A stretch of DNA of 64,000 bases. Source: Podarcis muralis (Eukaryota). Positions 24,889-25,857 of the stretch are shown piece after piece (positions within the stretch are counted from its first letter, which is position 1; every line of letters begins with the position of its first letter). The notes beneath the pieces were generated by a model that was not told the origin of the DNA, did not search any database, and saw only the letters and a list, made by a program, of their open reading frames with translations. The stretch is from contig NC_135656.1 in the NCBI RefSeq assembly GCF_964188315.1, positions 107,322,001 to 107,386,000 on the forward strand. Direction: 5' to 3'. Made by a program: the position numbers and the translations under genes.

Positions 24889-25857
24889 TCAACCGAGCCT
24901 TCCTTTGAAAAGCCTGGCCCACCAAGCCGACCAGGTAGGCTTCACCTGATACTGAACTTCCCCGTCTTCTCTGTACACGTTGATATCGCTCTGCCCCCCA
25001 CCAGAGATGAAGGTCAGATTTACTCCTCCACACGTCACCATCAGTTTGGCATCGTCCTGCAGCACCACTGGCTCACGTGGAAATTCTTGCAAGGCCTTGT
25101 TGAGGCAGCTACGCAGCTCCTTCAAATCTCCCTGAGTCTCGGAGATGTTGGACGGCAGATCTTGGAGGACATCACTGATTCTGGCGAGACTGAGTGGCAT
25201 TGGGTGGCGCCCAAGCCTTACCACATGGACTTCTGGGCTGGACTCATCGAGGATGTATGACGCTGTGCCGTTGATCCAGACCACTTCGATGTGGATTTCC
25301 CCTTTTCCGGAAACGAACTCCTGCTTTGTTCCGTTACACTGAAGGACCATCCTGGAGTTCTTCCGCACCATGGCTGGCTCCTCAGAAAACTTGTGAACAG
25401 CTTCCTCCAAGCACTTACGCATGGCTCCCTCTTGCGGCTCCTGCATCTCGGCTTCCAGTAGAGCCGCAAGACTGAGGTTTTTCTGTCCAACCAAGATGGC
25501 CGCTGTTGTGTTCTCCCCAGCTTTTGCCTTGTTGGCTTCAACGGGAGACTGCGGTCTCCACGGGGCCCAGAACAGAGCCCCGATAAAAGCCAGGGTGAGG
25601 AGGGTGAGGAAGGCAAGGAGAACCAGAATCAAAGTCCAGGTTTTTCGTTTGCCCAGAGGCCTGGTCGTCTGAGTCATAGTGGACTTGTCAGAGAAACTGG
25701 GCACGCCACATTCTATGCCGTAGAGCCATGATGGCGCAGAGCTTCGGGGTAAGATTCCCCAGAGTTTCTCTCTGTACGAGAATCTCTGCACAGGAATGAG
25801 CTTGCTGTCGTCCCCATCGTCCAGAAGCGGCTCAAACAGGTTGCTGTCATCCCTCAT
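24889..25857 (-). CDS. Uncharacterised 322-aa type II membrane glycoprotein with a tandem Cys-x24-Cys repeat; single coding exon
   Basis: Acceptor ttttcattgccag at 25869, then GCCAGCATG; open for 969 nt; KRK precedes a TM at about residues 74-97; six N-x-S/T sequons all C-terminal to the TM; internal repeat 17/55 identical. Confidence 0.85.
   Translation of the reverse strand: MRDDSNLFEPLLDDGDDSKLIPVQRFSYREKLWGILPRSSAPSWLYGIECGVPSFSDKSTMTQTTRPLGKRKTWTLILVLLAFLTLLTLAFIGALFWAPWRPQSPVEANKAKAGENTTAAILVGQKNLSLAALLEAEMQEPQEGAMRKCLEEAVHKFSEEPAMVRKNSRMVLQCNGTKQEFVSGKGEIHIEVVWINGTASYILDESSPEVHVVRLGRHPMPLSLARISDVLQDLPSNISETQGDLKELRSCLNKALQEFPREPVVLQDDAKLMVTCGGVNLTFISGGGQSDINVYREDGEVQYQVKPTWSAWWARLFKGRLG

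What the first reader, a model, noticed from the sequence alone, without database searches (positions are those of the whole stretch)
24889..25857. Orphan type II membrane protein with a tandem, unrecognised Cys-x24-Cys domain
Seen: residues 147-201 and 249-303 align without gaps at 17/55 identity (R.CL..A...F..EP............C.G....F.SG.G...I.V....G...Y), each preceded by LSLA. The N-tail has an acidic dileucine-like motif (NLFEPLLDD). KRK precedes one TM; six sequons (N116, 127, 175, 196, 237, 280) are all on the C-terminal side; the C-terminus is Trp-rich and amphipathic (WSAWWARLF). The whole CDS is one exon. I recognise no family. Inference: an endolysosomal or surface receptor/lectin with a possibly new helix-plus-beta-sheet domain, perhaps of retrogene or viral origin.
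Basis: partly seen in the sequence, partly recalled or inferred. Interest (0 to 1): 0.8.

Follow-up and report, generated by a model that had tools for sequence, protein, structure and literature searches.

The report
Reptile membrane glycoprotein, undescribed repeat domain
This is a real lizard gene, conserved for about 280 million years, for a single-pass membrane glycoprotein whose outer part is two copies of a ~98-residue domain that matches no described protein family or solved fold; it is not an orphan, but no one has studied its function.

Summary
The 322-aa ORF (24889-25857, minus strand) has one TM helix, six sequons that all lie C-terminal to it, and two Cys-x24-Cys repeats. The repeats share 17/55 ungapped identities against at most 13 in 300 shuffles, and BLASTP gives E=1e-12.

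It is a functional gene. Intact orthologues exist in lacertids, an amphisbaenian, Anolis, Varanus, geckos, skinks, snakes and alligators. Pairwise dN/dS is 0.14-0.48. So it is not an orphan.

Flank charges and a threefold sequon excess on the C-terminal side support a type II glycoprotein. A splice acceptor 11 nt upstream of the ATG is conserved from alligator to lizards, which argues against a retrogene. No viral relative was found.

Function is unknown. My best guess is a trafficked surface or endolysosomal binding protein, and it is weakly supported. Read-level expression data could not be obtained.

The parts
24889..25857 (-). Complete CDS of 322 aa plus TGA stop, in a single coding exon
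   Evidence: An identical protein is called at this place in the source assembly. Orthologous CDSs are intact in 8 species, with dN/dS 0.14-0.48.
25869..25893 (-). Polypyrimidine tract plus CAG splice acceptor; the last exon starts at 25868, 11 nt before the ATG
   Evidence: Read directly. The same arrangement is present in Rhineura, Zootoca, Lacerta, Anolis, Varanus, Eublepharis and Alligator. The alligator gene model splices an upstream coding exon onto it.
25648..25857 (-). Cytoplasmic N-tail, residues 1-70, acidic, with the conserved start M-[KR]-D-[DE]-x-x-L-x-E-P-L-L
   Evidence: Alignment A1. The alligator orthologue starts MKDDESLSEPLL. This segment has the lowest dN/dS among lacertids and Rhineura, 0.03-0.15. 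AF2 pLDDT is below 50, so it is probably disordered. Sequons: 2 observed against 7.0 expected over 21 orthologues.
25567..25647 (-). Single transmembrane helix acting as a signal anchor, residues ~71-97, preceded by KRK
   Evidence: Kyte-Doolittle peak 2.78. AF2 helix at 70-96. K+R total 64 on the N-side flank and 27 on the C-side flank over 21 orthologues.
25495..25566 (-). Variable stalk, residues 98-121
   Evidence: pLDDT below 50 for residues 99-119. It has indels in alignment A1 and the highest dN/dS of any segment, 0.34-2.4 on few sites.
25210..25494 (-). Repeat domain 1, residues 122-216: C149...C174, an NGT sequon at 175 that is invariant in the 18 squamates, and an F-x-S-G-x-G hairpin
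   Evidence: Domain HMM envelope 123-216. pLDDT above 90. Invariant columns are listed. N175 is a sequon in 18/18 squamates.
24892..25209 (-). Repeat domain 2, residues 217-322: C251...C276, ending in a Trp-rich helix
   Evidence: Domain HMM envelope 217-317. The single-domain AF2 model has pLDDT 92.4 and pTM 0.83.
24892..24939 (-). C-terminal Trp-rich amphipathic segment, residues 307-322
   Evidence: AF2 helix at 309-321. In the 2-TM paralogues of turtles and alligator, the homologous GWxxWxAR motif lies directly before a true second TM helix and a basic tail. An interfacial, juxtamembrane role is therefore inferred.
24446..24451 (-). Probable polyadenylation signal ATTAAA; the 3' UTR is about 440 nt and the last exon runs about 25868..24430
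   Evidence: Collinear conservation with Rhineura ends at the same place (window ~24442). The transcript end itself was not observed.

Best explanation
SHOWN. This is a functional, conserved protein-coding gene of non-avian reptiles. It forms one orthologue group across Squamata and Crocodylia. Its CDS sits in the last exon, behind a conserved 5' intron. The C-terminal two thirds are a tandem duplicate of a ~98-residue alpha/beta module. Each module has two helices, a short helix, a four-stranded beta meander and a closing helix. The module defines a family that has no name in Pfam and no detectable relative among solved or reviewed predicted structures.

INFERRED, strongly (about 0.85). The protein is a type II membrane protein, N-terminus in and C-terminus out. 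The two modules face the ER lumen or cell exterior, carry N-glycans, and each probably holds one helix-to-strand disulfide (C149-C174 and C251-C276). The Trp-rich C-terminal helix probably lies back on the membrane surface. If so, the ectodomain is held at both ends.

INFERRED, weakly (about 0.3). The conserved acidic, LL-containing N-tail directs adaptor-dependent sorting or endocytosis. The ectodomain then acts as a ligand-binding module of a surface or endolysosomal glycoprotein. Its likely binding surface is built from the family-wide conserved E-P turn and the F-x-S-G-x-G hairpin.
For: Gene reality. There are 18 squamate homologues plus lacertid copies at 90% identity or more. ORFs are intact and NG86 dN/dS is 0.14-0.48 in all 28 pairs of 8 CDSs. 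Squamates group with alligator at 97/99 support. The locus is collinear with Rhineura, and the Ly6 neighbour is shared with Varanus.

Duplication. The domain HMM finds 1-19 copies per protein.

Topology. K+R total 64 against 27 on the two TM flanks. Sequons C-terminal of the TM are 71 observed against 23.5 expected; in the N-tail they are 2 against 7.0; in TM-less paralogues they are 18 against 36.4. Both cysteines are present in 89/106 domains of TM-bearing members and in 36/130 domains of TM-less members. In 2-TM paralogues a basic tail follows the second TM.

Intron.
Against: No read-level expression evidence was obtained, because the single read-laying run was lost to a filter. The run-index evidence is only indirect.

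N175-G176 could be conserved as a beta-turn rather than as a glycosylation site.

Some paralogues have no TM and no signal peptide, and a few start with MGxC, which resembles a myristoyl/palmitoyl signal. In those proteins the same domain probably works in the cytosol, which weakens any argument from the domain to its compartment.

The LL motif lacks an acidic residue at -4 and so is not a canonical [DE]xxxL[LI] signal.

Nothing indicates a ligand. A missing fold match does not prove a new fold.
Confidence: 0.6

Rival explanations
1. The domains face the cytosol, as they probably do in the TM-less and lipid-anchored paralogues. On this reading the protein is anchored with its C-terminus in, and it acts on the cytoplasmic face of a membrane.
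For: Many family members have neither a TM nor a signal peptide. Three representatives start MGGCASK, MGACIPK or MGNCWCSC. One of these is found on transcript-like contigs in 6 runs.
Against: Across 21 orthologues the positive charges lie on the N-side of the TM, 64 against 27. Sequons show a threefold excess only on the C-terminal side, and only in this TM-anchored group. The cysteine pair is kept in TM-bearing members. The N-tail is acidic, disordered and poor in sequons.
Confidence: 0.1
2. It is a very divergent member of a known ectodomain family, such as a cystatin-like, BRICHOS, SEA or eRF1-N-like alpha/beta module, that the searches here failed to recognise.
Confidence: 0.12
3. It is a retrogene or a gene captured from a virus or mobile element.
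For: The CDS is a single exon, and turtle paralogues are single-exon too. The taxonomic distribution is patchy: reptiles, hemichordate, cnidarians and molluscs. An LTR retroelement lies 7 kb upstream in Zootoca.
Against: A 5' intron acceptor is conserved from alligator to lizards. The orthologous position is stable. No viral structural relative was found. The window holds no second copy and no flanking element signature. Purifying selection has acted for about 280 My. An ancient capture cannot be excluded.
Confidence: 0.05
4. It is a chance ORF or a decaying pseudogene with no function.
For: No read-level RNA evidence was obtained here.
Against: The ORF is intact at about 315-325 aa in all squamate homologues and in alligator. 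dN/dS is 0.14-0.48. There are 35 invariant columns over 18 species. Small-contig runs of five studies, guessed to be RNA, hold 77-88% of the gene's sampled words but only about 30% of the surrounding 10 kb.
Confidence: 0.02

Closest known systems
RefSeq/UniProt 'uncharacterized protein LOC...' models, e.g. Anolis carolinensis LOC100558663, Podarcis muralis LOC114588508, Lacerta agilis LOC117042050, Alligator mississippiensis LOC132244095
   Same: They are true orthologues: same length, same N-terminal motif, same TM and same two domains.
   Different: Nothing differs. The gene models already exist in public databases, but none has a name, a domain assignment or a paper.
eRF1/aRF1/Pelota N-terminal domain, the closest solved fold
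Tetherin / BST-2
   Same: It works like this protein only in layout. Both are type II TM proteins with a cytosolic N-tail and a glycosylated ectodomain with a second membrane attachment at the C-terminus. Here that attachment is a Trp-rich interfacial helix, and in paralogues it is a real second TM.
   Different: The tetherin ectodomain is a parallel coiled coil with a GPI anchor. Here the ectodomain is two alpha/beta modules and there is no GPI-type hydrophobic C-terminus. No sequence or fold similarity was found.
Invariant chain CD74 and other type II proteins with N-terminal leucine-based sorting motifs
   Same: Both have a short acidic N-terminal tail that starts M-x-D-D and carries L-based motifs, followed by a signal anchor.
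   Different: The luminal domains are unrelated. The motif here does not fit the strict [DE]xxxL[LI] pattern in this species. The comparison rests on general knowledge and was not tested.
Type II proteins with ~100-aa disulfide-bonded modules, such as BRICHOS (ITM2B, tenomodulin), the SEA domains of TMPRSS proteins and C-type lectin-like NK receptors
   Same: They share the topology and a compact module of about 100 aa with conserved cysteines.
   Different: No Pfam hit to any of them at E up to 1, either for the protein or for 87 domain instances. They did not appear in any fold search.

Membership tests
Type II (N-in/C-out) single-pass membrane glycoprotein | One hydrophobic signal-anchor helix and no cleavable N-terminal signal peptide | tested here: met
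   There is a single Kyte-Doolittle peak of 2.78 at residues 76-94, and an AF2 helix at 70-96. The N-terminus is acidic and hydrophilic.
Type II (N-in/C-out) single-pass membrane glycoprotein | Positive-inside charge bias, with the N-flank more basic | tested here: met
   K+R total 64 on the N-flank and 27 on the C-flank, summed over 21 orthologues.
Type II (N-in/C-out) single-pass membrane glycoprotein | N-glycosylation sequons concentrated on the luminal side | tested here: met
   71 observed against 23.5 expected on the C-terminal side; 2 against 7.0 in the N-tail. The sequon positions differ between lineages.
Type II (N-in/C-out) single-pass membrane glycoprotein | Experimentally shown glycosylation and orientation | not testable with these tools
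   This needs PNGase F or Endo H treatment and protease-protection assays.
The ~98-aa reptile tandem alpha/beta repeat family, defined here and unnamed | A match to the domain HMM, including L-S-x-x-x-L, helix Cys, E-P, N-A-x-L, F-x-S-G-x-G and Y | tested here: met
   There are two full-length envelopes, 123-216 and 217-317. Family-wide, near-invariant columns are L6, E46, G70 and Y87.
Any Pfam-A family | A score above the gathering threshold | tested here: not met
   The best hit is EFG_III at 19.6 bits against a cut-off of 27. No family recurs across 87 domain instances.
Tetherin / BST-2 | Coiled-coil ectodomain and a C-terminal GPI signal | tested here: not met
   The ectodomain is alpha/beta. 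The C-terminus ends ...ARLFKGRLG, without a terminal hydrophobic stretch.
Processed retrogene | No introns, and a multi-exon parent gene elsewhere | tested here: not met
   The 5' intron acceptor is conserved in 8 species and is used in the alligator model. No multi-exon parent was found; turtle paralogues are also single ORFs.
Acidic dileucine sorting signal [DE]xxxL[LI] | An acidic residue at -4 from the L-[LI] pair | tested here: inconclusive
   For L11-L12 the -4 residue is L7, so the pattern is not met. D3-x-x-x-L7 is followed by F in this species, by I in Varanus and by L in Phrynocephalus, which are canonical there. Adaptor binding was not tested.
Virus-derived gene | A sequence or structural relative in viral proteins | tested here: not met
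   The best BFVD match has E 0.055 and TM 0.28. Only structures were searched; viral genomes were not searched by sequence.

The most novel reading that the evidence does not exclude
The ~98-aa module is a genuinely new fold and a new metazoan domain family that works on both faces of membranes. It would be luminal in the TM-anchored orthologues and cytosolic in the acylated or soluble paralogues. The TM-anchored members, pinned at both ends by a TM plus either a Trp-rich interfacial helix or a second TM, would act as a double-anchored tether or innate-immunity factor specific to non-avian reptiles. That would be a functional analogue of tetherin built from an unrelated fold.
Probability: 0.1. 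Interest if true: 0.8.

Novelty: categorically new. Interest (0 to 1): 0.5.

Why it matters
If the model is right, this adds a new structural domain family to the catalogue of animal membrane proteins. Among vertebrates the family is found only in lizards, snakes, crocodilians and turtles. Turtles have expanded it to proteins of up to 19 repeats, and no member has a name, a paper or a structure.

Such lineage-restricted, tandemly expanding membrane families are often immune, reproductive or sensory. The family therefore offers a defined target for reptile biology, which has few of them. The confident AlphaFold model is also an easy target for structural work.

The caveat is that thousands of domains of unknown function exist. 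Without expression or functional data this remains a well-delimited unknown, not a mechanism.

Tried and rejected
1. Pfam on the protein gave only sub-threshold hits (EFG_III, TPR_14), which I reject as chance. On 87 domain instances no family recurs.

2. PDB sequence and profile searches gave nothing.

3. Fold searches gave no significant match. The whole model went against PDB Foldseek, VIA-wide, AFDB clusters and the Atlas. The single domain went against PDB Foldseek, VIA-wide, pdb_via, Swiss-Prot AFDB, BFVD and the Atlas. AFDB clusters returned only uncharacterised relatives.

4. The ESM feature search gave no usable hit.

I therefore have no read-level evidence on expression or splicing.

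6. The Logan contig L002, from a related lacertid at 96% identity, is collinear with the genome through the acceptor, so it says nothing about splicing. Its 350-aa ORF exists only because the upstream in-frame TGA is absent there.

7. A profile word search with a broad alignment and a search with a turtle paralogue added no bird, mammal, amphibian or named member.

8. The frog Mixophyes hit P0072 (E 6.5e-4) matches only the tail and TM part of the profile and has no domain hit. I treat it as spurious.

9. Pfam hits on the giant turtle proteins (DUF6374, Peripla_BP_7 and others) have no stretch that passes on its own. I reject them as an artefact of summing over repeats.

10. Literature searches for 18 gene or UniProt identifiers returned no paper, and one key-phrase search returned a single irrelevant paper.

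11. tblastn of the protein against the window found no paralogue in these 64 kb.

Full report
WHAT IS THERE

On the minus strand, an ATG at 25857 opens a 322-codon frame that ends at TGA 24889-24891.
- Sequons are at N116, N127, N175, N196, N237 and N280.
- Cysteines are at 149/174 and 251/276, each pair spaced by 24 residues. A fifth cysteine is at 50.
- LSLA occurs at residues 128 and 222.
- Residues 147-201 and 249-303 share 17/55 ungapped identities, against a maximum of 13 in 300 shuffles.

BLASTP of the two halves gives E=1e-12. One hydrophobic helix (about residues 71-97) follows KRK. The window holds no second copy.

IT IS A REAL, OLD GENE, NOT AN ORPHAN

A word-indexed search of 5.8 billion proteins found 18 homologues, all squamate and all labelled "uncharacterized". 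Identities include Rhineura 76%, Varanus, geckos and skinks 45-56%, and snakes 37-45%. The window's own 90% cluster holds Podarcis lilfordi, P. raffonei, P. muralis, Lacerta agilis and Zootoca vivipara, each 322 aa. The genome is therefore a lacertid (assembly record).

I fetched the CDS from eight species. All are intact single-exon CDSs. Nei-Gojobori dN/dS is 0.14-0.48 in all 28 pairs. The cytoplasmic tail is the most constrained part among lacertids and Rhineura (0.03-0.15), and the stalk is the least constrained.

A maximum-likelihood tree places the alligator proteins as sister to the squamate clade (97/99 and 97/95 support). These alligator proteins start MKDDESLSEPLL. The gene therefore predates the split of lepidosaurs and archosaurs.

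The locus is collinear with Rhineura for about 6 kb upstream and about 450 nt downstream. It shares its Ly6/uPAR neighbour with Varanus.

GENE STRUCTURE

A polypyrimidine tract plus CAG ends 11 nt before the ATG. The same arrangement is present in all eight species, including alligator. The alligator RefSeq model splices an upstream coding exon onto exactly this acceptor. Hemicordylus and the snakes have N-terminally extended isoforms ending ...AS-M or ...AT-M. These extensions match the in-frame F-A-S-M that is encoded after the acceptor here.

The CDS is therefore one exon, but the gene has an ancient 5' intron. That argues against a retrogene. An ATTAAA at 24451-24446 coincides with the end of conservation with Rhineura, which suggests a 3' UTR of about 440 nt.

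THE DOMAIN FAMILY

An exhaustive profile search of 1.84 billion representatives gave 60 hits. Those I could identify came from the following groups:
- Squamates.
- Alligators, including a tandem array, Y1Q_0024449-57, on one 207-kb scaffold.
- Turtles.
- One hemichordate, Ptychodera.

No bird or mammal was among them. The one frog hit is treated as spurious (see the tried-and-rejected list).

A 98-position domain HMM built from the two repeats finds 1-19 copies per protein. Chrysemys has 19, Pelodiscus 13 and Platysternon 10.

Foldseek against AlphaFold DB clusters adds uncharacterised proteins of a coral, an oyster and a scallop at E 1.8e-8 to 8.6e-4, and a second coral more weakly at E 1.1e-2. 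The Ptychodera domain keeps both cysteines, the C-D-G-T turn and the S-G-x-x-E-N hairpin.

NO KNOWN RELATIVE

- Pfam gives only sub-threshold noise for the protein, and no recurring family over 87 diverse domain instances.
- PDB sequence and profile searches are empty.
- AlphaFold2 with the family alignment models the ectodomain at pLDDT above 90. It models a single domain at pLDDT 92.4 and pTM 0.83. The order of elements is helix, long helix, short helix, four-strand meander, helix.
- No paper mentions any of 18 identifiers of family members.

TOPOLOGY

- Over 21 orthologues, the 15-residue N-flank of the TM carries 64 K+R and the C-flank carries 27.
- Sequons C-terminal of the TM number 71 against 23.5 expected from composition. 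The N-tail has 2 against 7.0.
- N175 is a sequon in 18/18 squamates, N127 in 12/18, N280 in 9/18, N116 in 7/18 and position 223 in 7/18. Many further sequons are specific to single lineages.
- TM-less paralogues show no such excess, with 18 observed against 36.4 expected.
- Both cysteines are present in 89/106 domains of TM-bearing proteins and in 36/130 domains of TM-less proteins.
- In a separate clade of turtle and alligator paralogues, the Trp-rich GWxxWxAR motif that ends this protein lies immediately before a real second TM helix and a short basic tail. That again places the domains on the non-cytosolic side.
- I infer that the Trp-rich end of the lizard protein is an interfacial helix, left after loss (or before gain) of that second TM.

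One caveat applies. N-G is also a favoured beta-turn, so conservation of N175 alone does not prove glycosylation.

EXPRESSION

Only indirect evidence remains:
- Fourteen small-contig runs (39-148 Mb), guessed to be RNA and drawn from five studies, appear in the run index. Twelve of them hold 77-88% of the sampled words of 24700-26000; the other two hold 51% and 47%.
- Small-contig runs of the same kind hold only 29-32% of the sampled words of 20001-30000.
- Whole-genome runs hold 81-91% of the gene stretch and 55-65% of the 10-kb stretch.

This fits a transcribed gene but is not proof. RefSeq isoforms with spliced 5' exons in several species are further indirect support.

HOW IT PROBABLY WORKS

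Shown: it is a conserved gene with a TM, a duplicated module and no known family.

Strongly inferred: it is a type II N-glycosylated protein with one disulfide per module and a membrane-apposed C-terminal helix.

Weakly inferred (about 0.3): the disordered, acidic and highly constrained N-tail, with its conserved ...L-x-E-P-L-L..., is an adaptor-binding sorting or endocytosis signal. The ectodomain would then bind a ligand through the surface formed by the family-wide E-P turn and the F-x-S-G-x-G hairpin. The near-invariant columns over 87 domains are L6, E46, G70 and Y87.

The LL motif does not satisfy the strict [DE]xxxL[LI] pattern in this species. The location therefore remains a guess.

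RIVALS

- A cytosolic orientation is favoured only by analogy with TM-less paralogues. A few of these start with MGxC, which resembles an acylation signal.
- A retrogene or viral origin is contradicted by the conserved intron and by the lack of viral relatives.
- A non-functional ORF is excluded by selection and conservation.

VERDICT

The gene models are already public as "uncharacterized", so what is new is the recognition of the domain family, its repeat architecture and its isolation in fold space. Interest is moderate (0.5). It is a clean, well-delimited unknown with a confident model, but no function is yet attached to it.

Noticed in passing
L012:3001-4959 (Dermochelys coriacea, protein P0025): The five-repeat turtle paralogue lies in one uninterrupted 652-aa ORF. 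The annotated 554-aa model skips about 294 nt, which is exactly one 98-aa repeat unit, so the 'intron' may be an annotation artefact. A further family copy starts about 2.4 kb downstream, which indicates a tandem array.
   Followed up: partly
Proteins P0019, P0020, P0021 (Chrysemys, Pelodiscus, Platysternon): These giant proteins consist of 19, 13 and 10 head-to-tail copies of the same ~98-aa domain, with no TM or signal peptide in the models. Two of them carry misleading database names ('MoeA', 'DnaK').
   Followed up: partly
Proteins P0053, P0034, P0055; loci L009 and L010: These TM-less family members start MGGCASK, MGACIPK or MGNCWCSC, which look like N-myristoylation and palmitoylation signals. 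P0053 sits on transcript-like contigs (short 5' leader, about 1.9 kb trailer) in 6 runs. This suggests the same domain is also used on the cytosolic face of membranes.
   Followed up: partly
Proteins P0026, P0036, P0041, P0085 (turtles, alligator): This paralogue clade has a TM before the domains and a second TM after them. The second TM follows directly on the Trp-rich GWxxWxAR motif and is followed by a short basic tail.
   Followed up: partly
window 49511-51829 (-): This 772-aa ORF is a C2H2 zinc-finger array, with 14 zf-C2H2 and 16 zf-H2C2_2 stretches.
   Followed up: partly
window 16392-19691; L001:16167-19466: The neighbouring gene has a PF00021 UPAR_LY6 (three-finger) product of 98 aa and is convergent with the gene studied. 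Blocks of it are conserved at the same relative place in Varanus, so the two genes are linked in at least two squamate families.
   Followed up: partly
L002:320-1372 (Logan contig of a related lacertid, 96% identical): In this relative the in-frame TGA upstream of the acceptor is absent, so a gene caller extends the ORF to 350 aa through what is probably intron sequence.
   Followed up: yes
Proteins P0008 and P0023 (Phrynocephalus forsythii JRQ81_003400 and JRQ81_003401): Adjacent locus tags and a 100/100 sister relationship in the tree indicate a recent tandem duplication of this gene in an agamid.
   Followed up: no
L004:1-3232 (Zootoca vivipara, about 7 kb upstream of the orthologue): An LTR-retrotransposon pol ORF (RVT_1, RNase H, integrase) lies here. 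It is absent from the same position in the window, so it is probably a lineage-specific insertion.
   Followed up: no
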